DNA of 64,000 nt from Vitrella brassicaformis CCMP3155 (GCA_001179505.1 CDMY01000244.1:62001-126000), one strand, 5' to 3'. Positions 1,363 through 35,094 are shown, counted from the first letter of the stretch. Numbers and translations are program-made. The notes: generated by a model from the sequence alone, not told the origin.

Positions 1363-1673
1363 ATCGACACTGATGCCGCTGACACGCGGGAGATGATGAT
1401 GGCGGGATCTTGCAAGCTCGCCTCGAAGCTGAGCTCGCGGATGCGATGACTCGTCCGCCGCAGTCTTTCTCCATCCAGATCTCTCATCTGCACCCATCTA
1501 TACGAGTTGCTTCACTGCAGCGGCTTTTCCTTCTGTCTGTCCTCGTTCTCGGTGTTCAGAGTGTGCCCAGCCGCCAGACCCACAGATCTCCGCATCGGCA
1601 TGAACCGCTGAGCCGTCGGGTAGACAGCCCTTCATCATCAGCCGCCCCGCTATCTCGTGCTTCTGTTGCATGG

Positions 1674-6429: not shown

Positions 6430-6729
6430 NNNNNNNNNNNNNNNNNNNNNNNNNNNNNNNNNNNNNNNNNNNNNNNNNNNNNNNNNNNNNNNNNNNNNNN
6501 NNNNNNNNNNNNNNNNNNNNNNNNNNNNNNNNNNNNNNNNNNNNNNNNNNNNNNNNNNNNNNNNNNNNNNNNNNNNNNNNNNNNNNNNNNNNNNNNNNNN
6601 NNNNNNNNNNNNNNNNNNNNNNNNNNNNNNNNNNNNNNNNNNNNNNNNNNNNNNNNNNNNNNNNNNNNNNNNNNNNNNNNNNNNNNNNNNNNNNNNNNNN
6701 NNNNNNNNNNNNNNNNNNNNNNNNNNNNN
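6430..6729. other. Assembly gap (300 N)
   Basis: N run; both flanks read C12-GGCA. Confidence 0.99.
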
Positions 6730-7361: not shown

Positions 7362-10300
7362 TTATCGCCTGAAGCTTGGCGCACACCCGACGTTCATGCT
7401 TCGGCGCGCCTTGCTGCAGCTCTTGCCCTTGATGCTGGCCTTGGTCAGGGCGTCAAAACGCTGGTCCTCCTCGTCAAGGGCGAAGTCACCAATGGATGCG
7501 GGCACCGACTTGATGGCGCTCAGCCGGCTCCTGTTGGCGAGTACCATCCTCCACATGGCCTGGGACGACCGGCGGGAGAGGGGGGAGAGATTGAGCTTCC
7601 TGTACAGCCGCTTGACGCGGTCCACGGGATTCTTCAAGAGGTCACTCAGCGTCACGTCGGCGAACTGGGCCTTGAGGTGCGGGTTGCGCCTCCTGAAGTC
7701 AGCCGCGGCCTTGGCGTTGGTCGCCATCTGGTGAAGCTCCCTCTCGGCCACCTTGGATGCGTCGACACTCATCAGGCCACGGCGGAGGGACAGCACCTCC
7801 TGACACCGACCAGCAACCGTCTCGCTCCCATCCCTGACATCATACACGCAGGCAGAAAAACCAACCAACATGATAAGGATGACCATCAACATACATACGT
7901 TTCGTTCCTTCCTTGTGCGTTCCCCTACGTACCTGTGGGCGAAGATGACCTTAGCGTCAGGGTATGTCGCCAAGATATCGTCGAGGTGGCCCACATGGTC
8001 TGTCGAAGCCAGGAGCCACCTCTTGTGCTCGCATCCGTGCTGCCACTGCAGGTGCTGCAGGAAGGTCTTATGGAATGCGTAGCCCTCCTGCGCCTCGGAC
8101 CCACTGTTGTCTGACAGCCACGACTCGTACTCGGGGGCGTCGAATTGCGTCGCCAGGAAACTGTCTCGCAGCGAGTTTTGCAGTATCATTGAGTCGTCGA
8201 ACGCCATGTCGGCTTTGCGAGGGCCGAGGCGGTTGAGGTAGTCGTTGGAACCAAACATCAGGTCCATGGCCACCTGGGCTGGTGCAAGGCGACAATCCTG
8301 CACACACATACACCCAAAGACATGAAGGACAGCAAGAGGTAAGTAAGGGATAGGACTCGTCGGTTGAGCATCTTCTCTCTTCCCCTCACTCACCGCTTCG
8401 GATGATGCCTGCACGAACTCTCCATGCTCGCCGAAGGGGTGAAGCATCTCACTGAATGTCGGCGCCCTGTTGCCCTCATCGCAGGCCAGCAGCTGCTGCG
8501 TGAGAGTCACCGACACTCGGTCGAAGCCGACAATGAACAGGGGCTGCTTGATCTGCTGGCGCCGGATGGCGGGGTGGGTGTGGGCCCTGTCAGCCATGTG
8601 CAGGAGGTTGCAGAAGGTCTGGCGCACTCTCTGCGCTAGCAGGAACTTGCCCAGGAAGGTCATGTTATGGCTCTCCTTGAGTGCCGACTCCATCAGGACA
8701 CCAGCAGCCTCAAGCACATCCTCCTCGCCACTCAGCTGCCTTAGGCCCGTCTGTCGCCGAACCATGTCGAGCAGCGCCTTCGGCTCCAGGGTGAGGGCCT
8801 TGGCATCACTGGGCAGCAGCTCCTGGCTGATGAGGTAGCGGAAGGACGCTTCCATGAGCTCCTTGGCGCCAGGCCAGCTGACCTCGATGTCCTCTGACGC
8901 ATTGGATGTGCGGATGGGGACCTCTGTGCGCTCCGCTGCGACGTCGTCGTACCAGTACTTCTGCCAGTGCCGCATGACGGGCACGTGGTTGAAGATTGGC
9001 GACTCGGGGCCCCTCGCCTTGATGGCCGCCGTGAAGTCCTCGAAGCTCACGGGCTTGATGGGCAGGCCCCAGGCTGCAGTCCAAGCCACCAGCTGCGACC
9101 TGATGGAAGCAAACGAGACGACACGACACATGAGCAATGCGAAATCAATGCCCTTGTGTGTCTCGTTGTTTGCTTACTCGGTGAGAGCGGCTGGGTTGGC
9201 GAGGTGGTAGAACCAGTGCTTTCTGTTCTCCTTGAAGGAGAGGGCGACGATCAGCTCGGCGACCATGTCGATGGGGGTGTTGTTGGCCCAGCTGGCAGAC
9301 TGCGGGAAGACACCCTCCTGGATGTAGCTCATGATGAGGGCAGTGGCGATATTGGACATGCCCGTGAAGCCAGTCGAGATGGCCATGTTGGTGTTGGGCA
9401 GCCGGTAGATGGTCACTGGCAGCCCCTGGTCACGTGCCTCCCTAAGCACCTCCTCGCACACGTACTTGCTCCAGGGGTAGCCCATCTGCTGTGGCGGGAA
9501 AACCTTGGTCATGTCCTCGATGGACGGCGGGGCGCCCTCCACGAGCTCCTCATCGGCAAACTCCTTGGTGAAATTGGAATCTGTTCAAACACAACAGCAG
9601 ATAAAAAGAATTCACGAATGGATGGATGGATGGATGGAAGGTGTGGCGGCGTCACTGCGTGTCGTGTGTGTCTTCTGCCTCACTCACCGAATGCCGGGAA
9701 GATGCCCAGCGTGGAGACGAAGTGCAGGGGCTTGATGCGGTCACAGGTGCAGAGCTCGATCATGAAGAGGAGGGGGAGGGTGTTGGCCAGTCGCGCGCGG
9801 CTGTACGCCTGGTACAGGCTGATGTTGGCGCCAGTGTGGTACACCGCGTCGATGGTTTCGCAGAGAGTTGAGAACTTCTCCTGCCCCAGACCAAAGAGCT
9901 CCTTGCTCAAGTCGCCCAACAGCACCACAATCCGAGCAGCCCACTCCTCCTTCCAAATCTTGGCCTCCACGCAGGCCTCCCTGATGCGCTCCATCCCCTC
10001 CTTGTGGTTCTTGGCACGGACGATACAGTGGACGGTGAGTCTCTTGCCGTCCACATTCCTCTCGAGAAGCGAGGCAAGCTGGAAACGGCCCACAATGCCG
10101 GTCACCCCGGTCAGCAGCACGTTGCTGTACTCGTGAGGCTGCTTGGCCGGTGCCGCCCCAGAGAGATCGATGCTCAGGTTTGCCTTGAGCTCAGCAAGGT
10201 CATCAAGGGGATGGATGGCGGCGTCGCTGGCCGTGCGCTTGGCCGACGTAGAGCGGGTGGTGCTGATGAAGCTGATGTCAGGGACGACGTGTGCGGTGTC

Positions 10301-13300
10301 CATCTCCTGCGCCTGCTCGAGGATGAACTTGGACATGGTGCTGATGGTGGGGTTGTCGAAGAGCAGGGTGGGCGACAGGGTGATGCCCGTCATCTTCCTG
10401 ACCGAGTTGCGCAGCTCGATCACGGCGCGTGAGTCGAGGCCCATCTCCATGAGTGGCGTGTCCAGGGCGAGTGTGGTGCTGGAGATGTCCTGCACGACCT
10501 CCATGACCAGGTGCGACATGTCGTCCTGGCTGATCATCTTGAGGTCGATGCTGCTCTTGTCGGAGATGAAGGTCGTCACGTGGCTGTCCGGGGTCACCTC
10601 GCCGTCTGGCTGAGGTGAGTCATCAGCTCCGCGCACCCGATGGCTGTTGTCGCCTTTGGCGGCGGTGCCACTAGGCTTCTTGGGTGAGTCATCCTCCAAA
10701 CCGGCTCCCTTCCAGGTGAAGGCCTGGTGGTTCCACGTCACGGGATTGTCCATCCAGTCCTCCCCTTCCTCCAGCCAAGGCCGGGACACCTTGCCCACTC
10801 TCGCCTCAACCGTCACGTAGGCGTTGGAGCCACCGAAGCCGTAAGCGCCTGTGCCGCCGATGAGGGTGCCCGTCTCGCGGGTCGCTTCGGTCGGCACGAG
10901 CTTGACACCTCCGCCCTCCTCGACCGGCATGATGAAGGGGAAGTCTCCCGCCGAGTCGATCTGGGGCGACAGCTGCTTGAGATGCAGATTGGGAGGCGCC
11001 ATGCCGTGGCGCAGCGTCAAGATGAGCTTGATCAAGTTGGCAATGCCCGTGGCGCCTTCCGTGTGCCCAATGTTGGTCTTGAGGGCCCCCAAGACAAGAG
11101 GCGACGAGGCAGGCCGCTTGCCGAACACACTCTTGAGGGCGCCCATCTCGATGGCGTCGCCCATGATCGTCCCAGTGCCATGCACCTCGGCGTAGCTGAA
11201 AGCGCTCGGCGACAGGTTGGCTTGGTTGAGGGTGTCGCGGATGAGGAGCTGCTGTGCGGGGCCGGAGGGGGCGGTGAGGGAGGCCGAGACGGCGTTGTGG
11301 CTGGTGGCGCTACCGCGGATGATCGCGAAGGGCTCGGCTGCCTTGGGGCGGTCGAGGCGCTGCAGGTAGGCAGCCCCGACACCCTCACCACGGGTGTAGC
11401 CATTGGCGGCGGAGTCGAAGGTCTTCACCTGCCCATCCGCAGACAGAAGCTGAGCCCTGCACACACACACGCAAACACACAGGCGGACGGACAATGAGTG
11501 GATCATTCGTCCGTCTCGTGCAGCCGCCCTGCCCTTTTCTTCTGCCTCACCCTGACAAGGCGATGTAGCTGTGGGGCGTCAACAGCAGGTTCGTCCCGGC
11601 ACAGAGCACTCCATCTTTGCAGGCACCCGCCAGCAGACTCTTGCAGCCCGCGTCGAGGGCCACCAGTGAGGAAGAGCAGGCAGTGTCCAGAGCGAAGGAG
11701 GTGCCCTTGAGCCCGAAGATGTAGCTGAGGCGATTCGCCAGGATCGACTGCGCGCTGCCGGTTGCTGCCAGGGAGCCGCCTTCCTGCTCATGAGACTTCA
11801 TGAGGGCCCAGTCTTGCGCCATGCATCCGACGAACACGCCAATGTTCTTGCCCGACACGGCGGAGAGCTGCTTGTTCTTGGAGAAGAGCCCGCCGCTGTG
11901 GAAGGCCTCGTAGGTCACCTCCAGCAAGTGCCTCTGGTGGGGGTCCATGCCAGCCGCCTCCCGCTGACTGATGCGGAAGAACTGGTTGTCGAAGTTGGCG
12001 ACATTGTCGATGAATGTGCCGGCCAGCGTGTAGTACTTGTTGGGGTCCTCGCCCTTAGGATCATAATACAGAGTCGTGTTCCATCGGTCCTTGGGGATGG
12101 TGGTCACGGCGTCCGTTCCCTCACATAGCAGCTTCCAGAAGCTGCCCAGCGAGTTGATGCCGCCAGGATAGCGGCACCCGATACCCATGACGGCGATGGC
12201 GCTCTCGCCGGTCTCGACGTGGACGACGTCGTCATGGGGGTGGTGGGTGGCTGAGGGGTCGACGTCAGAGCCCGACCGCTTGGCCAGCAGGGCGATCTTC
12301 TCGCCAGCGATGTAGTTGATGAGTGCGTTCATGGTGGGGTAGTCGAACAGCATGGCGATCGACAGCCTGACGCGCAGCTTGCGGGAGACGGCATCCCTGA
12401 ACTCCACCAGGCCCAACGAGTCGATGCCGAGGTCGACGAAGGGCACGTCCAACTGGACGGTGCCTTCCTTGGCCTGGTCCTGCATGATCTCGGTGGCCGT
12501 GTCCGTGATGGTCTGGGTGACGTGCTTAGTGATGGCCTCTGCGTCCATGCTCTTCTCCTCCTTGGTCAGGTGGCACACCTCGTCACCGTCACCCGAGCCC
12601 TCGCTACTCTCCGCGTTAATCTCCTGCCGCATCTGCTCGAAGAAGCGCTGGCTGTCGGGGGGGCGGAGGGAGAGGAAGCTGGACCAGTCGACGCCGATGC
12701 ACCCGACAGTGCCCGTCGTCTCCCTGGCGGCCATGATGTCCCCGAGCAGCTGCAGCCCCACCGCGTTTGTCAGGCCCTTGATTCCCACCTTGGCCAGTTG
12801 CTCCACCACCTGGGGCGACGCCATCCCGCCCTCTGTCCATGGGCCCCACTGGATGCTTTGGGCGGCGAGGCCGCGCGACCGACGGTGGTTGGCGAGGCCG
12901 TCGAGGCAGGCATTGGCGGCCGAGTAGTTGGACTGCTCCATGTTGCCGAAGAGGGACGCAACCGACGAGAACATGACAAAGTGATCCAGAGACGACCCAA
13001 GCAGCGAATGGAAGTTCCACGCACCTTGCACCTGAGGGAGGGACCACAAACAAGATATAAGGACACACACACACACAGACGGAGAAAATGAGTGAGCGGA
13101 CGAATGAGCCTCGGTCGTGGTCACATAGGATACCTTGGCATGGAAGACCTTGTCGATGGTCTCTCGGCTCTGCTTGGCGAGCGGGGCATCGTGCAGCACA
13201 CCCGCAGCGTGGAAGAAGCCCTTGATGGTGACATCCGACAGGGCGTCGACGACCCCCTCGCACTCCTTGAGGGACAACACGTCGCACGCCATGCAGTCGA

Positions 13301-16300
13301 CCTTGATGCCCTTGCTCGCCTTGACCTCCATCAGCTGATCCCAGGCGGCTGACTCCAGGACACTCTGAGAGGGGCTGCCACGTCGGGACAGCAGCACGAT
13401 GTGTGTGGCGCCGTGGTCAGCCAGCCACTTGGCCGTCAGCAGCCCGAGGGAGCCCAGCCCGCCCGAGATGATGTAGCAGCCAGTGTTGGACACCAGTGCA
13501 GAGTGGGCGACGTTGGTCTTGAGAGTCGACTTGATCAGGCGCGGGTAGAAGAGCTCGAGCTTGTCGTCTGCCTGACGCAGGGCGATCTCCCTGATGTCGC
13601 TCGTCTCGGCCTGGATGACCGACTCCACCACAGTCCTGATGACGGTGTCCAGGGCATCATCTGCCGACAGGGCCACGCTCGAGTCCAGGTCGACACATCC
13701 CAAGGGCGCCGGGCGGCCACAGGAGGCAGCCAGCTCCAGCCGCACACTCTTGGCGAAGCCCCACAGGCCAGCATGCCGCGGGATGGTGGCGGTGGACACC
13801 TCACTCTCATCCGTGACGTTGTGGACCCCGTGCGTCAGCAGCCATGTGGGAGCGACCGCCTCCTTCCCCTTCTTCCGGCTGAGCAGTGTGATGAAGGCCT
13901 GGCTGAGAGTCAGGCACTCGCCCAGCACGGCCGTCGGATCGTGGTCCTGGTTCTCCAGGCCGCCCAGGTAGAGGATGGCGTCCCAGGACCCCTGACTGTT
14001 AAGTGCACCGGAGAGCATCGTCTGGAGGTCGTCCGTGTCGGTGCTGCAGAGGCTTCCGAAGGGAACCAAGGTTGACTCGTCGCTCAGACCAAGGCGGAGG
14101 GCATCAAACTTGGCGACCCATTCAGACGGCACGCCCAGCAGCAGCAGCCGGGGACGGTCAAGCACCTCAGTGACATCCTCCTCTTGCTGCTCACGCTCGA
14201 CAGTCGACGTCCACTGGGTCTCCCAGAGCAGGTCAGCTGTGGCGGCAATGTCCATCCGTCTGACCTCTATGCCTTGGAACGAGGCCACTAGCTTGCCGGT
14301 CGCGGCGTCGGTCAAGGTGCAGTTCATCTGGGCTGAGCGCTCCTCCACCTTGATGATCTGCAGGTGGGACCACCAGCGGTCGTTGGGCGAGTGGGAGTAG
14401 GAGAGGGGCACGAACGCCTTGCCGATCCGGAAGAGCACCCACGCCCCGCTGCGGCCCTCGGTGCCATCGTTCTCTCTCCTCTTGTCATGCTCCAAATGAA
14501 TGACGCCCGCGGCGGCCTGGAAGGCGCAGTCCAGGACGCCTGGGTGAGCCATCAGGAAGGGGCCGTCCCTCTTGTCATACTGCTCCAGACACGCGATCGC
14601 CTCTTTGTCGCCCACCCAGCACGACTTGATGGCGCGGAAAGACGGCCCGTACTCGAGGCCCAAGGCGCGCAGCTGCTTGTACATCTCGTCCACGTTGACC
14701 TCCTGCTGGCACCGCTCCTTGACGACCTCGACGGGCTCGACGGGGGGGTGCAGGGCGGCGTCAGCGCCGAACCACAGGGCGCCGTTGGAGGCCTGCTGGG
14801 GGCTGACGATGTGCGCCGCCGAGTGCTGGACGAGCTTGCGCTTCTTGGCGACCGACGACGAGTAGAGAGTGATGGTCGTGCCGCTCTTGGCGCCACTGCC
14901 ACTCTGCTCCTTGACGGACACGTGGAAGCGGACATCGTCAGACACGCTGGAGAAGATTAGGGGGCGCTCGAAGAAAAAACCTGATGATGAAGATGGAACA
15001 TCACAGACACAGCAGAGTGAGCGAAGACGTCAACCACAACCTGGCTCCTTGTTGTGTACACACGCACCTTCGAGGCAGACGATGCCGTCATCCTTGCTGA
15101 TGGTCCGCGCGGCGGAGCAGATGGTTTCCACATACGTGGCGCCTGGGACGATGATAGTGCCGTTGACGACGTGGTCGCTCAGCATCCGCAGGACGTCCCG
15201 GCTCAGACGCCTCTCGAACGACACCTCGCGCGGGTGGGCCGCCGATAGGGACACTTGGGTGGGGCGGCCCAGCAGACAGTGAGAGGACGCGTCGGGTAGT
15301 CCATCCCCGGCCTCTACCGCCTCCAGGGTGTGCTTGGGCCAATCGTAGACCTGGTGGTCCCACTTCATGTCCGTGTGGAGGCGGCCCCGCTCCTCTGCCG
15401 GCTTCCACTCCTTGACGGCCTTGACGACCGAGTCGAGGAGGCCCGAAGCATCCCGCGTCTTGTCATCCATGGCCGCCAGCAGGGTCACGCCACTCTCACG
15501 CTCCTTGATGAAGTTGCGAGCTATCTTGATGAGCGTCGGCTTCGGCCCCACCTCAATGAAGACCACACCCGGGCTGCCGTCGGTTGCCTTGATGGCGCTG
15601 TTGAGCGAGTCCATAAACCTGACAGTCTTGGTGATGTGCTGAGCCCAGTAGTTGGGCGATGTCAGCTGTCCAGCCGATGCTGTCCTGCCCGTGACGGTGG
15701 AAATCAGGGGGATGGAGGGCGACTGCAGGGGGGCCTTGGCGAGCTCGTTGACGATGGCGTCGCGGAAGAGAGGCACGGTCGCGTTCATAAGGGGCGAGTG
15801 GTAGGCGTGGGACACGGGCAGCATCCTGTGCCTATCCTTGTCAATCTTGAGCAGCTCCAGAAGCGCCGACACCTCATCTCTCTTGCCCGCCACCACCACC
15901 CTCTCGGGAGCATTGACACCCGCGATGGCCAGGCTCTCGAATGACGACTTGCCGCTCTTCAGTTGCTTGATGCCCTTGACCACCTCGTCCTCGCCGGCCA
16001 GCAGTGCTGCCATGACACCATCCTCTGACGGTGTGTCCTGCATCAGGCGAGCGCGGGCCACGACCAGAGCGAGCCCCACCTCCAGCGACATGACGCCAGC
16101 AATGGTCGCCGCGACGTATTCGCCGAGAGAGTGGCCGAGGACCATGTCGGGCGACACTCCGCGCTTGATCAGGGACTGGGCGAGGGAGTAGCCGAGGGAG
16201 AAGAGGATGGGCTGTTGGTAGCGCGCCTGGCTCAAGAGACCCTGCAGCTCAGCCTTGGTGGCCTCGTCGTGGGTCTGGGGGTAGATGAGCCCGAGCATCG

Positions 16301-17175
16301 ATCGGGGGAGATGGGGGTCGACCAGCGCCGCACACCGATCCAGGTTGGCGCGGAAGACCTCGTCCGTCTCGTAAAGGTCCTTGCCCATCCCGACGTACTG
16401 GGAGCCCTGGCCCGTGAAGAGGAAGGCGACGCGGGGGCGGGTCTCCTTGTTTTCTTGGGCCGCTGCGGTGTCCTCCTCGGGGGCGTCGAATGGCGAGGAA
16501 AGGATGACGTGTGCGTTGGTGCCCCCGAAGCCGAAGGAGCTGACGCCTGCCACGAGTGCGCCCCCGTTCTTGCGAGTGAGCTGGAAGCCGTCTGCGGCCG
16601 AGGGGAAGACGACTGGGAAGCCCTCTGTGTTGATGTTGGGGTTGAGGGTCTTGAGGTGCAGGTTGGGCGGCACGCGCTGCATCTGGAGGCAGCAGATGGT
16701 CTTCAACACACCAGCCATGCCTGATTATTGAGTTGTGAATGACACAGGAGAGAGAGACCGACATGAGTGTGGTGGGCATGCAAAGGTGGGTGACTCCATC
16801 CAAGGCCTGCCTTGTGTATCCCTCACCTGCTGCTCCTTCAAGATNNNNNNNNNNNNNNNNNNNNNNNNNNNNNNNNNNNNNNNNNNNNNNNNNNNNNNNN
16901 NNNNNNNNNNNNNNNNNNNNNNNNNNNNNNNNNNNNNNNNNNNNNNNNNNNNNNNNNNNNNNNNNNNNNNNNNNNNNNNNNNNNNNNNNNNNNNNNNNNN
17001 NNNNNNNNNNNNNNNNNNNNNNNNNNNNNNNNNNNNNNNNNNNNNNNNNNNNNNNNNNNNNNNNNNNNNNNNNNNNNNNNNNNNNNNNNNNNNNNNNNNN
17101 NNNNNNNNNNNNNNNNNNNNNNNNNNNNNNNNNNNNNNNNNNNNGTTGGGTCCAAGTTGTTGTGCACTGAGTGAC

Positions 17176-17206
<31 letters not shown>

Positions 17207-20200
17207 GGCAGCAGTACACACTCAAGATGGGCCAGCCAGAATCCTCGATTCCGCTGTATTGCATACATGGCGTACCTCTTAAGCCCATGTCTATGTTGTC
17301 GATCGATGGGAAACTACCCGATGCCCAGCCGTCAAAGGGAACCTCAGCGAGACTAACCTCACCACCCCACCCCAGACTATCCCAGCACCAGTCACCGACA
17401 GTGACAGTGCCCACCTCCCTCTCCACGCCCAGGCCTTTCAGAACGCTCCTCCTTTCTTGTGGACTCACTGCTGTCTCGAACTTTACCTCTTTGACGTTGC
17501 CGGGCATCTTCTCTGCCAGCAGTCGTGCCACAGTAACGCCAAGAGCATTGGTCACCTCCAGCTCACTGTCCCTTGATGCAATGGTCACAGATAAGAGCCA
17601 CTTCTGAGCGGCGCCGCCCCACACGGTTAGCCTCAAACGCTCCAGGCCCCGCACACCATCCACAATGGATGAGGTGCCGTCGCGGATGAGCTCGGCAGCC
17701 GCAGAGGCCTCCAAATCATCGGGCACTAAGTGACAACAGACACACGGCAGCAATGCACACACAAGATGAGCCAGCCAGAGTCGTCTCCTGCACTGCATTG
17801 CATACCTCTCACGTCTAGGACTAGGTTATGAATCGATGGATAGCTATCCGATGACCGCTCCTCTGCCGGCTTCCACTCCTTGACGGCCTTGACGACCGAG
17901 TCGAGGAGGCCCGAAGCATCCCGCGTCTTGTCATCCATGGCCGCCAGCACGGTGACCCCGCTCTCACGCTCCTTGATGAAGTTGCGAGCTATCTTGATGA
18001 GCGTCGGCTTCGGCCCCACCTCAATGAAGACCACACCCGGGCTGCCGTCGGCTGCCTTGATGGCGCTGTTGACGGAGTCCATGAACCTGACAGTCTTGGT
18101 GATGTGCTGAGCCCAGTAGTCGGGCGATGTCAGCTGTCCAGCCGATGCTGTCCTGCCCGTGACGGTGGAAATTAGGGGGATGGAGGGCGACTGCAGAGGG
18201 GCCTTGGCGAGCTCGTTGACGATGGCGTCGCGGAAGAGAGGCACCGTCGCGTTCATCAGGGGCGAGTGGTAGGCGTGGGACACGGGCAGCATCCTGTGCC
18301 TATCCTTGTCAATCTTGAGCAGCTCCAGAAGCGCCGACACCTCATCTCTCTTGCCCGCCACCACCACCCTCTCGGGAGCATTGACACCTGCGATGGCCAG
18401 GCTTTCGAATGACGACTTGCCGTTCTTCAGTTGCTTGATGCCCATGACCACCTCGTCCTCGCCCATCACCGCTTGATGCCCGCTGCCGCTGCCGCCGCTC
18501 CGATGGACTACCTGAGCCAGCAGCCGTCAACCTGTGACCACCTGTATGGCGCTATGCATCAGCAGCGTCGGCCACAGCTGCCGTACCACCCTGGTGAGAG
18601 CGACCTGCCCCCTCTGCTGGGCGGCGACGATGACTCGCTCATGGGGTCGGGTGACGAGCTCGACAGACATGGCCTTGGCGGAGGGGAAGGGGGAGGCATG
18701 GATGACTTCGATCCCGTCGGCCACCATCGGCCATCGGACAGCCCCTATGACGGCGCCACGGGATTCGGACCACCTGTGGGCCAGCCGGGGATGGGCAATA
18801 GCGCTCTGTCGCCCATCGCGGAAGATCCATGTGGGCACATCATGACCCGTGGTGAGCGGGGCAGACAATGGGCCCATACCGGTTTGTGTTATGACTACGT
18901 GTGTTCCGATTTCTGCAGGTGATTCCAAGAAGCGTCGTGTGGAGCAGATGAGCCCGTCCCCGCCTTCGGACCATTCACAAGCCCGCCCCAGCGTGTCCTT
19001 CTCAATGAGCACGCTGCAGAACTCCATCATCATAGCCGACCTGAAGAAGAAGATGGAGCAGTGTGAGGAGCTGAGGGGCCGCTTCAACAAGCTCGAGGTG
19101 CAGCAGAACCAGCACTACCAGTCCAACATCACTACCGTCGGCGCTTCGGGCACCTTCGGCCCTCCGCATTTGAGTCAATTTCTGGCTGGTCGTTCCTGGC
19201 TCGGCCCTGCGGGCTTCGCCTTCGCACCACACTAGTCGTTGAAGCGACTGCCACCATGCCCACACCGGCAGCAGTGCTGCCATGACACCATCCTCTGACG
19301 GTGTGTCCTGCATCAGGCGAGCACGGGCCACGACCAGGGCGAGCCCCACCTCCAGCGACTTGACGCCAGCAATGGTCGCCGCGACGTATTCGCCGAGAGA
19401 GTGGCCGAGCACCATGTCGGGCGACACTCCGCGCTTGATGAGGGACTGGGCGAGGGAGTAGCCGAGAGAGAAGAGGATGGGCTGTTGGTAGCGCGCCTGG
19501 CTCAAGAGACCCTGCAGCTCAGCCTTGGTCGCCTCGTCGTGGGTCTGGGGGTAGATGAGCCCGAGCATCGATCGGGGGAGATGGGGGTCGACCAGCGCCG
19601 CACACCGATCCAGGTTGGCGCGGAAGACCTCGTCCGTCTCGTAAAGGTCCTTGCCCATCCCGACGTACTGGGAGCCCTGGCCCGTGAAGAGGAAGGCGAC
19701 GCGGGGGCGGGTCTCCTTGTTTTCTTGGGCCGCTGCGGTGTCCTCCTCGGGGGCGTCGAATGGCGAGGAAAGGATGACGTGTGCGTTGGTGCCCCCGAAG
19801 CCGAAGGAGCTGACGCCTGCCACGAGTGCGCCCCCGTTCTTGCGAGTGAGCTGGAAGCCGTCTGCGGCCGAGGGGAAGACGACTGGGAAGCCCTCTGTGT
19901 TGATGTTGGGGTTGAGGGTCTTGAGGTGCAGGTTGGGCGGCACGCGCTGCATCTGGAGGCAGCAGATGGTCTTCAACACACCAGCCATGCCTGATTATTG
20001 AGTTGTGAATGACACAGGAGAGAGAGACCGACATGAGTGTGGTGGGCATGCAAAGGTGGGTGACTCCATCCAAGGCCTGCCTTGTGTATCCCTCACCTGC
20101 TGCTCCTTCAAGATGCCCGATGTGCGTCTTGACAGCCCCGATGGCCAATGGCGATACGCCAGCGTCACGACGGCTCTTGGCGAAGACGGCCTTGAGGGCG

Positions 20201-24866: not shown

Positions 24867-24900
<34 letters not shown>

Positions 24901-25030
24901 CGTGCGCTGTGGTGTGCTGCGTACCACGTGGCGTGGCAAACGCCTCGTTGTTGTCCTCCATCTCCAAGTTGGGGGTCTTGGTGTCCACGGCCGGAGCAGG
25001 AACATTATCAACAGCGTAGCCGAGCGGCAT
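7362..25030 (-). CDS. Multimodular type I polyketide/fatty acid synthase: FAAL-ACP-KS-AT-DH-KR-ACP-KS-ACP-thioester reductase (R)-sulfotransferase-like; locus interrupted by a partial duplication and a gap
   Basis: FAAL ~24780-21900 (LAFLQFTSGSTGQPKGV, SWLPVYHDMG, YGMAENT, LRTGD, GRIKDMII, TTSGKVRR). ACP ~21580-21400 (LGVSS). KS1 ~21180-19780 (DTACSSS, EAHGTGT, KTHIGH, SSFGFGGTNAH). AT ~16450-15400 (FLFTGQGSQ, GHSLGE, HAYH). DH ~15290-14250 (DHVVNGTIIVP). KR ~13480-12830 (GGLGSLG, AAGVLHD, NYSAAN). ACP ~12520-12310 (LGIDS). KS2 ~12200-10750 (DTACSSS, EVHGTGT, KTNIGH). ACP ~10500-10320 (MGLDS). R ~10130-9150 (LLTGVTGIVG, GYPWSK). ST-like ~8780-7480. ATG at 25030, stop TAA at 7364-7362. Confidence 0.9.
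7480..8780 (-). CDS. C-terminal sulfotransferase-like domain of the PKS (bacterial Stf3/Sulfotransfer_3-like)
   Basis: TFLGKFLL...NLL...HPAIRRQQIKQPLFIVGFDRVSVTLTQQLLACD..NRAP..SE..HP and RWLL...H...LDDILATYPDAKVIFAHRD align by eye with the bacterial sulfotransferase pattern HPEI....I.RPIFI.G.PRTGTT.L..LL..DP..R.P..WE / LK.P.H...L..L...YPDA..I..HRDP. Confidence 0.72.
15387..16844 (-). repeat. Copy A of the duplicated KS1-C-terminus/AT segment (intact reading frame)
   Basis: 15387-15995 aligns with 17855-18463 (offset 2468, scattered substitutions). ~16000-16844 aligns with 19270-20114 (offset 3270), and 16261-16844 looks identical to 19531-20114. Confidence 0.93.
16845..17144. other. Assembly gap (300 N)
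   Basis: N run directly after the duplicated KS exon fragment (HLEGAAG). Confidence 0.99.
17145..17854 (-). pseudogene. Fragment of an unrelated multi-exon repeat-type gene embedded in the PKS locus
   Basis: Two similar exon-end/intron units (SYPSIHNLVLDVR|gtatgc...tag|VPDDLE and SFPSIDNIDMGLR|gtacgc...cag|VHNNLD) with in-phase splice sites. No PKS motifs. Confidence 0.5.
17855..20114 (-). pseudogene. Copy B of the KS1-C-terminus/AT segment; AT disrupted by a ~800 bp insertion and truncated
   Basis: The AT frame breaks after DGVMAALL (~19270), resumes at GEDEVV (18463) and leaves PKS homology after KPAEER (17855). Confidence 0.8.
18476..19235 (+). CDS. Two-exon hypothetical ORF (~230 aa) carried by the insertion in AT copy B
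   Basis: ATG at 18476, GT-AG intron 18852-18918 in phase, TAG at 19233-19235. G/P/D-rich N-terminal half, a KKRR motif and a heptad-like IIIADLKKKMEQCEELRGRFNKLEVQQNQ. Confidence 0.5.
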
Positions 25031-25674
25031 GGTTTCAGCGGGAGAGTAATGGGCAGATGTGGTGGGCTCGTATATATCGACAAGACGGGACGAGGATGCG
25101 ATAGCTGCGATAAAGGGGTGGCAGGTTGAATGCCGACACAGTTAGACAAGCAGACGAGACGACAAGACACAGACACGCAGGCAGGCAGTGAGGGGCAGGG
25201 CCTTTCCTATACAGATGCCGCTGGGCACAGCAGATCAGATCTCCTCGCACGGATAGATCTCGGACAGAGAGCAGTCAAGCGCAAGCACACAGTTGCCAGT
25301 CAGATTGCAGCAACCCCACCAAAGACACACAGAGAGAGAAAAAACGAATGGACAGTTGGGGAGAGCTCTCTCTCTAGCTCGCAGACAGAGCGATCCGAGT
25401 TGCGAGCGGTCTCTCTCCGAGCTCTCCCCGGGTGTCTTGCCTCCTGCCACGCCCACCACCCTAGCAGCTGCTGTTGATACTTTCCCCGAGGCAGTTTAAT
25501 CATCCGGCTTCCCTTCAAGGCGACAGAATATCGTCAGTGACTGCGGCCATCCCATCATCGCATCGCAACGGCGTGGCTGGCGTGACTGACAGCACCTCTT
25601 GTCGCAAGCTGACCACCTCGTCGCAAGATCTTGTCCCTGCTTGCCTGCCTCATCCGCCATTACTGTCAGTCCCG

Positions 25675-28600
25675 ATGTTCGCGACGTGGAAGGGTCGTTT
25701 TGTGGGGCGCATCGAGAGGTTCTTTTACAACTACACGTGCTTCGTCTACCGGCACCCATGGAAGTTCATCTGGGTGACTCTGCTGCTGTCGCTGTCTGTG
25801 GGGACCCTCACCTTCTTCCGTCAGAAGGAATTCGACACCGAGATCAACTTTGCTATGCCAGACAGCAAGGCGGTCAAAGCAAGGTGAGCCAATCAACCCT
25901 CCGACGGTTCATGGCATCCGTCAGACATGCTTGCTTGCTTGTTTCTGATGGTTGGTTGTGTGACGTGACAGGGAGTTGTACGAGAAGCATTTTGGTCAGT
26001 GGCCCCGGGATGCGGCCGTCGTGGCGTCGGCGGTGGATCCTGATGACAACCTGCTGACCAAGGAGCACCTGGATGAGCTCAGGGCGCTCACAGACGACAT
26101 TGCCAATGTCACAGTGAAAGTGGACGGCAGGAGCTGGAGATTCGAGGATATTTGTGCCCGAGATGGGACGGGCGAATGCGACATGGCCACTGTACGCACA
26201 CACAGCTGATGCTGTGCCACGCACAGGCCAGACAGCGATAGGCTGGCACCCTCACACACTGCTCTGCTGGTGTGGTTTGTGTGGGCGTCGATTGGTCAGG
26301 TGTTCATGGTGTATGGTGAGGACAGCGAGGACCGGTACGGCACCCCTCTCAACTACCCCAGACACCCCTCCATCCGCCACGGCGGCCTGTTCCCCTGGCC
26401 TGTCGCCTTCCTGATGGGCAACATCACTGTCGAGGACGTCAACGGTCGGCAGAAGGCCACCCGCGCCAGCTCATTCATCTTCCGCTGGGCAGTGACCCCT
26501 GATGCTGCACCAAAAGCCGCTATTCTCCAGTGGGAGAAGGCCTTCCTGCACAAGGTCATGGACTGGACCCCAGAGTTCCGCGACAAGCATGGTATTGAGC
26601 TCCTTCGCTACGCACGGAGGACACCAGGTACGTAAGGATGGGTGGATTTGATGCGACACAGACGTGACGAAGGTGATTTCTTCCTTTCTTTCTTTCTTTC
26701 TTTCTTTCTGTGTGTGTGTGTGTGTGAATGTGCAGAGGATGAGCTTGCCAACAGTTTCTATCCGCTGATGGAGTTTCTCATCCGCATGGGGTGCTGTGGT
26801 CTGGTGGTGGGCATCTACTGTGTTGTGGCCAATCTGTCGGGATTCGGCAACGGACACAAATCTAAGTAAGTCAGTGACACGGTCGGACGGTGTGTGCAGC
26901 TAGCTCACCTTGTCCGTCCGTCCGTATAACTAACTGTTCATCTCTCTCTCATCCATCGTCTGTGTTCAGGTTGGTCCCCGCCATCATGGGCCTGGTGAGT
27001 GCGGTCCTGGGATCCTTTCTGGGCTTCGGTATCGTGTACAGTGCCGGGTTCAAGCATGTGGTGACGATGGAGGTGACCCCATACCTGTGCATGGGCATCG
27101 GCGTCAACGACCTCCTCGTCATCCTCAATGCATACGCACCCGCTTCCCAAATCGAGGCAGACCCCATGAAGAAGTGCGCACGGACCATGAAAGACTCAGG
27201 TACGGGGGGGTGGACCCACTCGCACGCACACACACGGCACCACGTTTGCCCATACACATCGGCGGCCACTCATTGGTGTGCGCGCCGTGCTGTGCTGTGC
27301 TGTTGCTGTGTGTACGTGCAGGTTTGGCTATCACGATCACCACCCTGGCCAACGTCATCGCCTTCGGCATTGGTGCGTCTACTGGGTATACGGCTGTGGT
27401 CAATTTCTGCGTCCTCACTGCCGTGGCCCTCGGCTTCGTGTACATCTATGCCCTGACGTTCTTCCTCCCCTTCCTCTGCCTCGACGCCCGCCGCGAGGCC
27501 TGCAGCCCCCCCTCATACTTGAAAGGCTACTTTGGGGTGGGGCGTGGTGGCACTGCCAAGGGCGACGCCACCCCCTCGACCAACATCATGAGCGGCGACA
27601 GCAGCAAGCCCGAGGTGTCCCCTCCCGCCTCCACACAGGCCTTCTCGCCGCAACCCGAGGGCGACCGAGACATCGCCTTCCCCACCATCGAGACCATTGA
27701 CCTTGGCCCAAGCGGAGACTATGACGTGGAAGAGGCCGGCAAGACGACCACGCTGACGCCAATCAGAGAGGAAGAGGAGGCATCCGATGCCGCCGAGGCC
27801 GTCACTGAAATCAGTGCCGTGGCCAGTGGCGTCCACGAGCTGGTGGCCCTGCAGGTGCTGCAGCAGGAGGACCGCATCCAGCAGAAGCTGCGGCAGAGGC
27901 GGCAGAGGCGGCAACCGGCAGCCGGCAGTGCAGCGACACACGAGGCCAATCATGCTCCCGATGTGGAAGCGCAGGCGCCCCGCCAAGAGAGCGAGGCAGA
28001 CTCCAAGACTGCCGGTCCCCCCTGCAGCGGGTTCTTCTCTGTCCAGCTGGCCAAGCCCGCCGATAGCAGCCCCGTATCTGTGGACGTGGAGGAGCCCAGG
28101 GGCCTTCACGGCAAGTGGATGCGGCTCTACTTCAGACGCTTTTGGGGCAGGTGGCTCACCATCCCAGCCGTCAAGGTACGTGAGAGAGAAGAGAGCGAAA
28201 CCAACCTGCCGCACAGCCAGCCGGCGTTTGTACGTATTGTGTGTTTAGGTGTTTGTGGTGGCGCTGTGGTTGACCTACGTGGGTTTGTGTGGGTTCTCGG
28301 CCTCCAAGTTGCGTGTGGAGTTTGAGGTATCGAACACGGCGCCGTACGGCTCTTACTTCATCGACTTCCTCGGCGGTGTCGACGAGGCCTTCGGAGGGTT
28401 CAACCTTCCTGGGGTGTTGCTGTACTCGGAGAAGCAGCATTGGTGGACCAAGGCCACTCGGGAGGCCTTCATGGAGTTCGAGGACGAGCTGACGCGGGTG
28501 GAGGGCGTCCACCCTGAAACACAAAGCGGCCTCTATAGATTCTACGAGTTCTACAGTCGCACCCCAGAGCTCCTGCAGGAGCTCAACGAAATGGAGAATG

Positions 28601-29773
28601 ACCCCAAGGCATTCTCTGACAAGTAAGTGAGACAGATACACAGGCAACAGCAAATTTCTCCTACTTCATCTGATGTCACCGAGTGTGTGTGTGTGTGTGT
28701 GTATGCGGTTTGTCTGTTCTGTTCAGGTTGCGTCAGTGGATGAACAGGACCATGATCACCAGCACGCCCTTCAAGCTCTTCAAAACCGACTTCAACTTCA
28801 ACGATGACGGTACGCGCACAAGCTAACGTGGCAGCCTCCCTCCCAGCCGAGCCGAGCCAGCACCTTGATGATGCGTCTTTTGTGTGTGTGTGTGTGTAGG
28901 TGAGTTGGAGGCCTACAAGACCAAGTTCTTCATGCGGGCGTACAGCGACCCGCCCCTGGGAGGCGCACCCCTCATGCAGCGCATCCGCGATAAGTGCGAC
29001 AGAGTGAAGAGGGACCACGGCATCACGGTGGCCACCTTCACCGACGCCTTCGTCTACTACGAGAGCGACCTGATCCTGGTCCCACAGACCCTCGTGCAGC
29101 TGTCCGCCGCCCTCGTGGGCGTCCTCCTCGTCTCCATCTTCCTCCTCCACGGCGCCATCACATGCGCCCTGGTGCTGGTCATGCTGATCAGCATCGACCT
29201 GGGCGTGTTCGGCTTCATGACTGTGTTCGACCTGCCGCTGAATCTCATCACCTCCATCAACCTCGTCGTCTCCATCGGTTAGTGTAGTGAGTGTGTGTGA
29301 TCACGCCACCGTGCCATACGGCACACGAAGCGACGGCGTGTCTGTACTGTATGTATGGCGGCCTGCCGGTTGTCTGTCTCGTGTGTGCAGGGTTCTCTGT
29401 GGACTTCACCACCCACATCTGCCACGCCTACACGCTGGCAGTGGGGCGCACACCAAACCACCGTATGGTGGAGACGATGGCGCTGATGGGTGCCCCCGTG
29501 TTCAGCGGCGGCATGTCCACCTTTCTCGCCTTGACGCCCTTCCTCATCGTTCAACGCTCATACTCATACGACTCGTGGTGCCTCATGATGATACTGGTCG
29601 TGGCCTGCGGCGTCCTCCATGCGCTGGTCTTCCTGCCGGTCATCCTCTCCCTCCTCCCCATCAGCAAGGCCAGGAACCGCACCAATAGCCAGCCCAATCA
29701 GGCCCCGACTGAGGCGCGGGGGCAGGCTGCCAAGGGTCAAGACAACAAGGGCGCTGTGTCACTGCCGGCGTAA
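25675..29773 (+). CDS. Patched/NPC1-like sterol-sensing-domain RND-superfamily transporter, multi-exon
   Basis: TM1 KFIWVTLLLSLSVGTL. SSD helices VTPYLCMGIGVNDLLVI and GLAITITTLANVIAFGIGASTGYTAVVNFC..AVALGFVYIYALTFF. Second repeat with ISIDLGVFGFMTVFDLPLNLITSINLVVSIGFSVDFTTHI and GAPVFSGGMSTFL. ATG at 25675, TAA at 29771-29773. Confidence 0.9.
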
Positions 29774-32202: not shown

Positions 32203-32233
<31 letters not shown>

Positions 32234-33523: not shown

Positions 33524-35094
33524 TCAGTTGGCCATGCCCGCCGACACGCGCAGGCCAAGCCGTGCCCTGGCCAGTCCATGCAGGTGGCGGAGTCCCCTGC
33601 TGATGGGCGAAGCTGAGGGTGAGGAGGGCGGTGACTCGCCCCCTGCGGCGCCGTCCGCCCCTGTGACCATCTTGTCTTCGCTCTTGCCCTTGCCCTTGCC
33701 CTTGTCACCGACCAGGAGGGACCTCAAGGCCCTCCCGAATTCAGCGACGAGCACCTCGCTCTTCTTCTGCATGTTCTGATCAATGGGCGGATGGACAGAC
33801 AGACAGGCACACACACACACATGTCGGTCGGATGTCAGTCACGTCTCTGTCTGTGTCTGTCTGTGTCTGTCTGTGTCTGTCTGTCTGTCGCTCACCGGAA
33901 CATAGTTCTTGACGTAGAACTGTCCGAAGAGGAGTGCGTACGAGAAGTACATGAGGAGGGCACACAGGGCGTTGTTGTAGTGGACCGGGTCGCCCGTCGC
34001 CTCAGGACGCAGCATGGCCGATACCGTGATGCCCACACCAACAAACATCTGCACGACAGTGATACAGCACAGGCGACTTTCCATAAGCCTTGCTCTTTCC
34101 GTGCCTTCCTTCCTCGTGTGTCTCCCTCACCTGGCTGAGCTGGGCGGAAGTGATGAAGGGTCGCAGCTTCTTCAAAACCCTGATAGATCGATACGTACGG
34201 CAGGCAGACAGGTCAGTCAGGTGTGCTCACGTGGGTAGGTGGGCTCGGTGACTGACTCACCTGTTTTTGGCGAAGAGTGCGGTGAGGGCGTAGTAGAGGT
34301 ACATGACGCCGTGGACGCAGAGGTTGATGAAGGCGAACTGGTGGGCGAAGGCGACACCCAGGTGAACTGCGCTCCAGCAATACAGGGCCTGAATGAAGCA
34401 AGGGAGGGAGGGAGGGAGGACAACACACACACGCACGCACACACACACACACACATCCGTATGACAACAGAGAGCCTCTCCCTGTGTGTGTGTGTCAAAT
34501 GTGTGCGTCCATACCACGGTGACGTGGTGGTACGCGTGCAGGAAAGTGATGGGTCGCTTCCTGAGTGCCAGCAGCACCGTGTCGCCGAACTCAATGAGCT
34601 TGCTCACCGCGAACCACACACAAATCGCACGAGTGGTGGGCTGAAGTCAACGCACCCGAAGACAAAGCAGTTGGACACAGATCCCATTGTCCTCCCCGTC
34701 GGTGCTGTCGGCTCACCTTGTAGTCCTTTTCGTGCTTGGCTGCCGTGAAGACCAGCTGCCAGTCGTCCAGAAGCTGTGTGTGGAGACGCACACAGAACAG
34801 ACAGAGAGGCCATGCAGAGCCCCGCCTGCTATGTCTGTGTCCCACCCACGTGTGTGTCTTACTTACCACGAGGGCAACGCCGAGGATGGAGAAGAATGAG
34901 AGGGCGAGGTTCCATGCGCAGATGAACGGCTTGATGGGCAGCGGCTCCCGATTCCGCATCCAGTGCCGCAGCGAGAATATGACCGGCAGATAGAGAGCGA
35001 TGCACCCCAGCCACGGCAATCGAAAGTACTCCTCAGTGCGAAACCCGCTGCCTTGCGTCCAGTAGTCATCGCTGAATGGCGAGTAGGGGGCCAT
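33524..35094 (-). CDS. GNS1/SUR4 (ELO) fatty-acid elongase, ELOVL6-like
   Basis: WNLALSFFSILG, FAVSKLIEFGDTVLLALRKRPITFLHAYHH (His box), NLCVHGVMYLYYAL, ITSAQL, QMFVG, LMYFSYALLFGQFY. ATG at 35094. Confidence 0.92.

What the first reader, a model, noticed from the sequence alone, without database searches (positions are those of the whole stretch)
7362..35094. Candidate eukaryotic lipid biosynthesis/export cluster: FAAL-PKS, Patched-type RND transporter and ELO elongase
Seen: the PKS ATG (25030, minus) and the Patched-like ATG (25675, plus) are head-to-head 644 bp apart, and the next gene is an ELO elongase. Established: mycobacterial lipid loci pair FadD-type FAALs, Pks, sulfotransferases and MmpL RND exporters (e.g. 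sulfolipid-1), and Patched/NPC1 proteins belong to the same RND superfamily and move lipids. Inference: the elongase supplies long acyl primers, the PKS builds the lipid and the RND protein exports it, perhaps to a cyst or sporangium wall. Caveat: head-to-head pairs are common in this window, so adjacency alone is weak evidence.
Basis: partly seen in the sequence, partly recalled or inferred. Interest (0 to 1): 0.85.

Follow-up and report, generated by a model that had tools for sequence, protein, structure and literature searches.

The report
Lipid synthase paired with Patched-type transporter
In the alga Vitrella, a giant fatty-acid-primed polyketide synthase starts back-to-back with a fast-evolving relative of the malaria-parasite lipid transporter NCR1; a similar enzyme-transporter pair occurs at a second place in the genome, so the two probably work together, while the neighbouring elongase shows no sign of belonging.

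Summary
The window is Vitrella brassicaformis contig CDMY01000244.1.

- **PKS.** On the minus strand, 7362-25030, lies a multi-exon type I PKS: FAAL-ACP-KS-AT-[gap]-KS(end)-AT-DH-KR-ACP-KS-ACP-thioester reductase-sulfotransferase-like.
- **Transporter.** Its ATG is 644 bp from the ATG of a 10-exon, transcript-confirmed Patched/SSD gene (25675-29773, 1062 aa).
- **Elongase.** An intact ELO gene (33524-35094) follows, but on the minus strand, so it converges on the transporter gene.
- **Gap.** The gap at 16845-17144 is not an in-frame join. Its left edge ends inside KS coding sequence and its right edge looks like intron. At least 1 kb of KS is missing, and the run contigs carry further related copies absent from the window.

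The transporter is not a single-copy NCR1. It is the longest-branched of four Vitrella-specific paralogues of the apicomplexan NCR1 family. A second paralogue (P0002) lies divergent from a FAAL-ACP-reductase gene whose A and R domains resemble this PKS, and no other flanking gene is shared between the two loci. A 2020 paper reports two Chromera genes that fuse an SSD/AcrB-like N-terminus to a one-module PKS; I could not verify them.

Nothing links the ELO, co-regulation is untested, and apicomplexan NCR1 loci have no PKS neighbour. I put PKS-transporter coupling at about 0.5 and the three-gene cluster at about 0.1. The scan has another note on this same PKS (s1-205475).

The parts
7362..25030 (-). 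FAAL-primed type I PKS, probably one gene. It is annotated as three models of 178, 1204 and 3268 aa, and it is incomplete because of the assembly gap.
   Evidence: Pfam domain order. Gene calls. Catalytic motifs are intact: DTACSSS, HGTGT, GHSLG, HxxxGxxxxP, DSL and a TGxxG Rossmann motif. A spliced minus-strand joint 22760->22831 is seen in RNA run X7.
22318..25030 (-). Fatty acyl-AMP ligase (loading) domain, spread over several exons
   Evidence: AMP-binding hits on the exon pieces. The best NCBIfam matches are FAAL models PRK05850 and FadD21/28/32.
19522..22002 (-). ACP plus KS of module 1
   Evidence: PP-binding, ketoacyl-synt and Ketoacyl-synt_C. Active-site motifs present.
17856..19994 (-). 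AT of module 1 (copy B), split by an 801-bp insertion at 18464-19264
   Evidence: The two AT halves are in different open frames. Comparison with the uninterrupted copy A. In-frame GT..AG intron solutions exist. The insertion is present in DNA-like contig X3 18258-19643.
18554..19235 (+). Antisense, spliced transcript (annotated 204-aa gene) nested in the insertion
   Evidence: Gene call. Plus-strand GT..AG joint 18850->18918 in RNA run X7. No Pfam family.
16845..17144 (.). Assembly gap. It hides at least about 1.05 kb of KS coding sequence plus the end of module 1, and possibly a whole extra module.
   Evidence: The left flank is 99% identical to 19265-20114. The right flank is intron-like. 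Loose-end sequences occur nowhere in the window.
15033..16844 (-). End of KS2, then AT2 (copy A, uninterrupted), then the start of DH
   Evidence: Pfam. 97-99% identical to copy B.
9177..15029 (-). DH-KR-ACP-KS-ACP-thioester reductase
   Evidence: Pfam. NCBIfam thioester reductase domain TIGR01746.
7362..9173 (-). C-terminal sulfotransferase-like domain
   Evidence: Sulfotransfer_3, E 2.5e-15. The best solved relatives are 2zq5 and 2z6v. The aligned 5'-phosphosulfate loop reads RVSVT where 2zq5 has RTGTT.
25031..25674 (.). Divergent intergenic region. At most 365 bp lie between the PKS ATG and the most upstream base of the transporter transcript contigs.
   Evidence: Sequence. RNA contigs L005 and L006 begin at 25395 and 25402.
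25675..29773 (+). NCR1-family Patched/SSD RND transporter P0001 (1062 aa, 10 exons). Transcript contigs span 25395-30823.
   Evidence: The best solved relative is 8v0g NCR1 at 202 bits, against about 104 bits for NPC1 and PTCH1.
33524..35094 (-). ELO fatty-acid elongase (330 aa; probably Vbra_12050, by matching length and gene order). A neighbour, not shown to be part of the unit.
   Evidence: Pfam ELO. Gene call. Motifs. Listing in PMC7464705.

Best explanation
A FAAL-primed, reductively releasing polyketide synthase and a lineage-specific NCR1-type Patched/RND transporter form a two-gene unit. They are transcribed outward from one short promoter region.

Proposed mechanism:
1. The FAAL domain loads a long-chain fatty acid onto ACP.
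2. Three or more KS-containing modules extend it. Two are near-identical KS-AT modules, and at least part of the set is hidden in the gap.
3. The terminal reductase releases an aldehyde or alcohol.
4. The sulfotransferase-like domain may sulfate the product.
5. The transporter takes the amphipathic product out of the membrane and passes it outward.

Shown here: the gene structures, domain orders, intact catalytic motifs, expression of both genes, the paralogue tree and the second paired locus. Inferred: the substrate, the product, the direction of transport and any cell-wall destination. The ELO gene is an ordinary neighbour.
For: - Domains and motifs.
- The divergent starts are 644 bp apart, and the transporter's 5' UTR reaches 25395.
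- Both genes are transcribed: exact spliced contigs for P0001 in two runs, and a spliced PKS joint in RNA run X7.
- P0001 is the long-branched member of a four-gene Vitrella clade (UFBoot 99) within the apicomplexan/chromerid NCR1-like family.
- Paralogue P0002 is divergently paired with a 1389-aa FAAL-ACP-R gene on another contig.
- That enzyme's nearest relative found outside its own near-copy is this PKS. Summed pieces give about 350 bits, against 189 bits for the best other hit.
- Nothing else is shared between the two loci.
- P0002 is sister to the unpaired P0151 (support 100). The pairing was therefore either kept from before three duplications or arose twice.
- PMC7464705 describes two Chromera SSD/AcrB-PKS fusions. 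P0001 and P0002 give the same Patched + SSD + weak ACR_tran Pfam pattern.
- The conserved TM4 and TM10 acidic motifs are retained.
Against: - There is no expression-level data, so co-regulation is untested.
- At the second locus a 300-N scaffold gap and an annotated 90-aa ORF lie between the two genes.
- Two of the four paralogues have no lipid-enzyme neighbour.
- Toxoplasma, Cryptosporidium and Gregarina relatives have none either.
- No shared promoter motif was found between the two loci.
- The Chromera fusions could not be retrieved or checked.
- The PKS is incompletely assembled, and its first AT carries an 801-bp insertion whose removal from the mRNA was not seen.
- The sulfotransferase loop is partly degenerate.
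Confidence: 0.5

Rival explanations
1. Chance neighbours. The PKS and the transporter merely share a bidirectional promoter region, as many gene pairs do in this compact genome. P0001 would then be a general membrane-lipid homeostasis protein like apicomplexan NCR1.
For:
- The NCR1 family is described as serving general membrane lipid homeostasis (PMC6424564).
- Two of the four paralogues, and the three apicomplexan loci examined, have no PKS neighbour.
- No shared promoter motif was found.
Against: - The same kind of pair recurs at a second, otherwise unrelated locus.
- A rough estimate: with about 60 megasynthase genes among about 23,000 genes, a given gene has such a neighbour with probability about 0.005. 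Two of four by chance is then about 1e-4. The gene counts come from my reading of PMC7464705 and from general knowledge, and this is not a formal test.
- Chromera fusions are reported in the literature.
Confidence: 0.3
2. The full three-gene cluster. The ELO would make very-long-chain primers, the PKS would extend them and the RND protein would export the product.
For: - The three genes are physically close, within 28 kb.
- The ELO is intact.
- A FAAL needs a long-chain fatty acid as its substrate.
Against: - There is no ELO at the second paired locus.
- The ELO is convergent, not co-oriented or promoter-sharing, and 3.75 kb from the end of the transporter coding sequence.
- It is one of eight elongases that PMC7464705 classes as ordinary enzymes for saturated and monounsaturated fatty acids, with Chromera relatives.
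- ELO products are acyl-CoAs, whereas FAALs take free acids (established biochemistry; an inference here).
Confidence: 0.1
3. The PKS is decaying or is really two or more separate genes. The AT of module 1 is interrupted by an insertion that hosts an antisense gene, and the modules beyond the gap may not be joined to it. In that case no complete assembly line starts at 25030.
For: - The 801-bp insertion does not have canonical intron ends at the points where homology with copy A breaks.
- It is present in DNA and retained in an RNA contig.
- No joint specific to copy B was seen.
- The annotation splits the gene in three.
- The gap is unresolved.
Against: - Thirty-two in-frame GT..AG intron solutions exist just inside the insertion.
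- Nested antisense genes normally sit in introns.
- All catalytic motifs are intact on both sides.
- The A and AT domains are each split across annotated models, which points to annotation error rather than separate genes.
- Short-word contigs break at the 97-99% repeats, so a missing joint is expected.
Confidence: 0.1

Closest known systems
Mycobacterial FadD(FAAL)-Pks-MmpL lipid loci, e.g. sulfolipid-1 (FadD23, Pks2, PapA1, MmpL8, Stf0)
   Same: - A fatty acyl-AMP ligase primes a type I PKS, and the locus also encodes an RND-superfamily membrane protein that moves the lipid (PMC9989471, PMC3318749).
- A sulfotransferase takes part in the pathway.
- The ST-like domain's only solved relatives are 2zq5 and 2z6v. 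From memory, these are mycobacterial Stf sulfotransferases.
   Different: - This is a eukaryotic nuclear locus with introns.
- FAAL, PKS, reductase and ST are on one polypeptide.
- Release is by thioester reductase, not by acyl transfer to trehalose.
- The transporter is of the Patched/NPC1/NCR1 branch, with no MMPL Pfam hit and no MmpL among its solved relatives.
- The resemblance is an analogy, not shared descent of the locus.
Apicomplexan NCR1 (PfNCR1, structure 8v0g; TgNCR1)
   Same: - It is the closest solved relative, at 202 bits against about 104 for human NPC1 and PTCH1.
- Both carry an SSD and 12-TM RND core without the NPC1 N-terminal sterol-binding domain.
- Both fall in the same broad alveolate family in the tree.
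   Different: - P0001 is one of four Vitrella in-paralogues and has the longest branch, 1.05 substitutions per site against about 0.5.
- At 1062 aa it is shorter than PfNCR1 at 1470 aa.
- In TM4 it reads GVND where its paralogues read GVDD.
- The apicomplexan genes have no PKS neighbour.
Cryptosporidium CpPKS1/CpFAS1-type megasynthases (AL-ACP loading, C-terminal reductase). Cited from my own knowledge, not checked here.
   Same: Acyl-ligase-ACP loading unit, multiple elongation modules and a terminal NAD(P)H-dependent reductase, in an alveolate.
   Different: The Vitrella enzyme has an added C-terminal sulfotransferase-like domain, has introns, and is paired with a transporter gene.
Chromera velia Cvel_8275 and Cvel_22311 ('ACR-B coupled' KS proteins; PMC7464705)
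   Same: An SSD/AcrB-like membrane domain is combined with a PKS module in the sister chromerid. Their sizes (4384 and 4523 aa) roughly equal a ~1060-aa transporter plus a ~3400-aa single-module A-ACP-KS-AT-DH-KR-ACP-R-ST synthase (my own estimate from typical domain sizes, not computed).
   Different: They are reported as single fused genes with the transporter at the N-terminus, whereas Vitrella has two divergent genes. I could not obtain the sequences, so orthology and the reality of the fusion are untested.

Membership tests
Type I modular PKS with FAAL loading and reductive release | An A domain of fatty acyl-AMP ligase type, followed by ACP | tested here: met
   AMP-binding plus PP-binding. 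Exon pieces score highest on FAAL models, for example 99 bits for PRK05850 against 64 bits for the best CoA-ligase model. All are below the full-length cut-offs because they are fragments.
Type I modular PKS with FAAL loading and reductive release | KS, AT and ACP domains with catalytic Cys/His, GHSxG and DSL motifs | tested here: met
   DTACSSS and HGTGT in both KS domains, NIGH in the last KS only, plus GHSLG and GIDSL. One KS is only partly assembled because of the gap.
Type I modular PKS with FAAL loading and reductive release | A C-terminal thioester reductase domain | tested here: met
   NAD_binding_4. TIGR01746 at 131 bits over its first 139 of 371 positions, which is below its full-domain cut-off of 213 because the domain is split by an intron.
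Type I modular PKS with FAAL loading and reductive release | One continuous reading frame or transcript | tested here: inconclusive
   A gap at 16845-17144 and an 801-bp insertion in AT1. No bridging transcript was seen.
PAPS-dependent sulfotransferase | Intact 5'-phosphosulfate-binding loop | tested here: inconclusive
   Sulfotransfer_3, E 2.5e-15. The loop that aligns to RTGTT of 2zq5 reads RVSVT.
RND superfamily, Patched/NPC1 family | Sterol-sensing domain plus a second 6-TM bundle | tested here: met
   Patched SSD at 96 bits and Sterol-sensing at 89 bits, with the C-terminal bundle matching ACR_tran weakly. It also matches TIGR00917 and TIGR00918.
RND superfamily, Patched/NPC1 family | Acidic residues in TM4 (GxxxD) and TM10 | tested here: met
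   D343 and D940 are invariant among the four paralogues. P0001 reads GVND in TM4 and GFSVD in TM10.
NPC1 proper | N-terminal sterol-binding domain and NPC1 middle luminal domain | tested here: not met
   The protein begins at TM1. There is no NPC1_N hit, and NPC1_MLD reaches only E 0.008, below its cut-off.
Single-copy housekeeping NCR1 orthologue | One-to-one orthology with PfNCR1/TgNCR1 | tested here: not met
   Four Vitrella in-paralogues form their own clade (UFBoot 99). Their position relative to the TgNCR1 clade is unresolved, with support of 44-46.
MmpL family | MMPL domain, or closest similarity to MmpL | tested here: not met
   No MMPL Pfam hit for P0001. No MmpL chain among solved relatives at E<=1e-5.
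ELO/GNS1/SUR4 elongase | KxxExxDT, HxxHH and MYxYY boxes | tested here: met
   KLIEFGDT, HAYHH and GVMYLYY are found in the minus-strand exons. Pfam ELO, E 2.8e-10.
Biosynthetic gene cluster (functional) | Linkage conserved in relatives or paralogous loci | tested here: inconclusive
   Met for enzyme plus transporter at a second Vitrella locus, though across a scaffold gap. Not met for the ELO. Absent in three apicomplexans. The Chromera genome was not retrievable.
Biosynthetic gene cluster (functional) | Co-regulated expression | not testable with these tools
   Only contigs were available, and these show presence, not level. The supplements of PMC4501334 hold no entry for these genes.

The most novel reading that the evidence does not exclude
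Chromerid algae have a eukaryotic counterpart of the mycobacterial FadD-Pks-Stf-MmpL line. In this reading, a lineage-specific branch of NCR1/Patched transporters has been recruited from general lipid homeostasis to serve as dedicated exporters of the products of FAAL-primed, reductase-terminated synthases. The coupling would be written in the genome three ways:
- a divergent pair with a full PKS-R-ST (this window);
- a divergent pair with a minimal FAAL-ACP-R (locus L001);
- outright gene fusions in Chromera.

The product would be a long-chain, possibly sulfated, hydroxy-alcohol destined for the cell surface or cyst wall.
Probability: 0.3. Interest if true: 0.75.

Novelty: new variant of a known kind. 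Interest (0 to 1): 0.55.

Why it matters
NCR1 is an antimalarial drug target (PMC6424564). A free-living relative in which NCR1-type paralogues are genetically tied to defined lipid synthases would offer candidate natural cargoes and a way to study how these transporters choose substrates.

It would also be, as far as I know, the first case of a Patched/NPC1-type RND protein acting as the dedicated partner of a polyketide or fatty-alcohol synthase in a eukaryote. That would parallel the way mycobacteria build their envelope lipids. It also points to an unknown long-chain, perhaps sulfated, lipid in chromerids.

Tried and rejected
**Verifying the Chromera fusions (all five routes failed):**
- None of the best 150 of the 401 SSD hits carries a PKS domain.
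- The Chromera protein P0074 is not in the contig index.
- The metagenome scan returned only two distant relatives.
- Both word-indexed searches with P0001 returned almost only animal PTCHD3/NPC1L1 proteins. They missed even the Vitrella paralogues, so their blanks mean nothing.
- The length filter (0.55-1.75 times the query) excludes proteins of 4400 aa.

**Other dead ends:**
- I looked for a shared promoter motif between the two paired loci and found nothing beyond chance.
- The supplements of PMC4501334 and PMC7464705 hold no entry for these gene ids.
- treekit's default alignment timed out. I used MAFFT with FastTree and then IQ-TREE instead.

**Readings considered and rejected:**
- *The two near-identical KS-AT copies are an overlap artefact at the gap.* Rejected because the right-hand contig runs 710 bp of different sequence past the repeat, and the DNA-like run X3 confirms the structure of copy B.
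- *The 'skips 805' joint shows splicing of the insertion.* Rejected because it carries copy A's variant letters and its extra GGC, so it is copy A laid on copy B.
Full report
**Source.** The window is Vitrella brassicaformis CCMP3155, contig CDMY01000244.1. Window position = L004 position + 15674.

**The PKS.** Open frames on the minus strand between 25030 and 7362 carry these domains in order:
- AMP-binding, spread over several exons (22318-25030);
- PP-binding and KS (19522-22002);
- AT in two halves (19265-19994 and 17856-18463);
- the gap;
- the end of a second KS, an uninterrupted AT and the start of DH (15033-16844);
- DH-KR-ACP-KS (11550-15029);
- KS_C-ACP-NAD_binding_4 (9177-11578);
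- Sulfotransfer_3 (7365-9173).

The A-domain pieces score best on fatty-acid--AMP ligase models. The active-site motifs of KS, AT, DH, ACP and R are intact. The public annotation splits the gene into models of 178, 1204 and 3268 aa. The A domain and the first AT domain are each divided between models, so this is most likely one gene. PMC7464705 lists Vbra_12045 (3268 aa) and Vbra_12047 (1204 aa) as 'other KSs'.

**The gap, tested first.**
- Positions 15994-16844, which run to the very edge of the N run, are 99.1% identical to 19265-20114.
- Positions 15387-15995 are 97.2% identical to 17855-18463.
- There are therefore two near-identical KS-AT modules, and the left flank stops inside KS C-terminal coding sequence, just past a ~105-nt intron.
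- The right flank (17145 to about 17487) contains a (CA)n run, has no Pfam domain, and follows a likely GTAAAG donor after an exon at about 17488-17725.
- The two sides are therefore not continuous or in frame.
- By comparison with copy B, at least about 1.05 kb of KS (equivalent to 20115-21168), plus whatever ends module 1, is missing.

Laying contigs of four runs on 17145-23144 (6000 letters) gave loose ends at 19917, 19767, 18498, 18480 and 21113. Their letters occur nowhere in the window. One RNA contig carries 14 differences over 19269-19917. At least one further related copy therefore exists, in the gap or elsewhere in the genome.

**The insertion in AT1.** Copy B carries 801 bp (18464-19264) that copy A lacks.
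- It is real in DNA: contig X3 covers 18258-19643 without a mismatch.
- The 'skips 805' joint with GGC between is copy A laid on copy B, as its variant letters show.
- The exact homology break-points are not GT..AG, but 32 in-frame GT..AG solutions lie just inside them.
- Run X7 is RNA. It shows a minus-strand 70-nt intron (22760->22831, CT..AC) in the A domain.
- X7 also shows a plus-strand 67-nt intron (18850->18918, GT..AG) inside the insertion. This matches an annotated 204-aa plus-strand gene (18554-19235) with no Pfam family.
- I read the insertion as an intron that hosts an antisense gene, but no joint specific to copy B was seen.

**The transporter.**
- P0001 (1062 aa) maps to 25675-29773 in 10 exons.
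- Two RNA-derived Logan contigs (L005, L006) encode it exactly and span 25395-30823.
- At most 365 bp therefore separate its transcript from the PKS ATG.
- It starts directly with TM1, carries Patched SSD and Sterol-sensing domains, and gives a weak ACR_tran hit.
- Its best solved relative is the NCR1 chain 8v0g (E 1.3e-58, 202 bits). NPC1 and PTCH1 score about 104 bits, and no MmpL chain appears.

**Paralogues and tree.** Vitrella has at least four close paralogues: P0001, P0002, P0003 and P0151. An IQ-TREE analysis used 28 sequences and 842 columns under LG+F+G4.
- I chose the 28 from the best full-length phmmer hits plus two named animal proteins (P0162, P0167). P0004 was left out as a shorter copy of P0151.
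- The four Vitrella genes form a clade (UFBoot 99).
- P0001 is the long first branch, sister to (P0003,(P0002,P0151)) with support of 82 and 100.
- Apicomplexan NCR1-like groups and Chromera Cvel_23145 and Cvel_4232 lie outside this clade, with weak backbone support (44-46).

The transporter is therefore not a single-copy housekeeping NCR1.

**The second locus.** On contig CDMY01000231.1 (L001), P0002 lies divergent from a 1389-aa AMP-binding + PP-binding + NAD_binding_4 gene.
- That gene's A domain is 45-48% identical and its R domain 36% identical to the window PKS.
- Summed, these matches (about 350 bits) exceed the best other database hit to that enzyme (189 bits). The one exception is an 88% near-copy at a contig end, P0169.
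- None of 137 flanking open frames of L001 matches the window. Only the enzyme-transporter pair is common to the two loci.
- Caveats: a 300-N gap (9154-9453) and a 90-aa annotated ORF lie between the L001 genes.
- The loci of P0003 and P0151 have no lipid-enzyme neighbour.
- Cryptosporidium, Gregarina and Toxoplasma relatives have none either.

Because P0002 is sister to the unpaired P0151, the pairing is either ancestral to the clade and lost twice, or gained twice. Either history argues against pure chance.

**Literature.** PMC7464705 describes two Chromera genes, Cvel_8275 and Cvel_22311 (4523 and 4384 aa). In these, an N-terminal AcrB-like or sterol-sensing structure is fused to a one-module PKS. 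This is the same Pfam pattern that P0001 and P0002 give. I could not retrieve these proteins, so this remains a citation rather than a test.

**The ELO.** The gene at 33524-35094 (minus strand, 330 aa; probably Vbra_12050 by matching length and gene order) is intact. It is convergent with the transporter gene, has no counterpart at L001, and is listed among ordinary elongases of saturated and monounsaturated fatty acids. The other neighbours are a DUF255/thioredoxin-like gene on the left and a protein kinase on the right.

**Verdict.** The best reading is a two-gene synthase-transporter unit (confidence about 0.5). It is analogous to, but not homologous with, mycobacterial FadD-Pks-MmpL loci (PMC3318749, PMC9989471). 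The three-gene version gets about 0.1 and chance adjacency about 0.3. The product and the direction of transport are inferences.

Noticed in passing
window 18554-19235 (+), inside the PKS AT1 domain: An antisense gene (annotated, 204 aa, no Pfam family) sits in the 801-bp insertion that splits the AT domain. RNA run X7 shows its 67-nt plus-strand GT..AG intron removed (18850->18918). The RNA contig runs into the PKS exons on both sides.
   Followed up: partly
window 15387-16844 versus 17855-20114: Two KS-AT modules are 97-99% identical at the DNA level, including a ~105-nt intron. This points to recent module duplication or gene conversion, and it probably caused the assembly gap. Contigs also indicate a third, slightly more divergent copy that is not in the window.
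   Followed up: partly
L001 2365-7447 (-), Vitrella contig CDMY01000231.1: A stand-alone FAAL-ACP-thioester reductase (1389 aa) looks like this PKS with all its KS modules and the ST removed. Its roughly 200-aa C-terminal tail has no Pfam family, but the first ~57 residues of the tail resemble the linker that precedes the ST domain here.
   Followed up: partly
L014 3-2157, end of Vitrella contig CDMY01000328.1: P0169 is a partial ACP-reductase protein 88% identical to the L001 enzyme. The contig ends where a partner transporter gene would lie, so a third pair can be neither seen nor excluded.
   Followed up: no
window 26700-27400 region of P0001 (residues 338-343): In TM4, P0001 reads GIGVND where its three paralogues read GIGVDD. 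P0001 also has by far the longest branch of the four.
   Followed up: no
window 7800-8600 (-): The ST-like domain's only solved relatives are 2zq5 and 2z6v. The loop that aligns to RTGTT in 2zq5 reads RVSVT, so PAPS binding may be weakened. The open frame also seems to read through a short intron around residues 420-450.
   Followed up: partly
window 1383-6200 (+) and 6430-6729: The left neighbour is a DUF255/thioredoxin-like (Thioredox_DsbH) gene. A second 300-N assembly gap lies at 6430-6729, just beyond the 3' end of the PKS.
   Followed up: no
window 24866-24905, 17175-17203, 26680-26730: Microsatellites sit in introns of both genes: (CTGT)n, (CA)n, and (TTTC)n followed by (TG)n.
   Followed up: no
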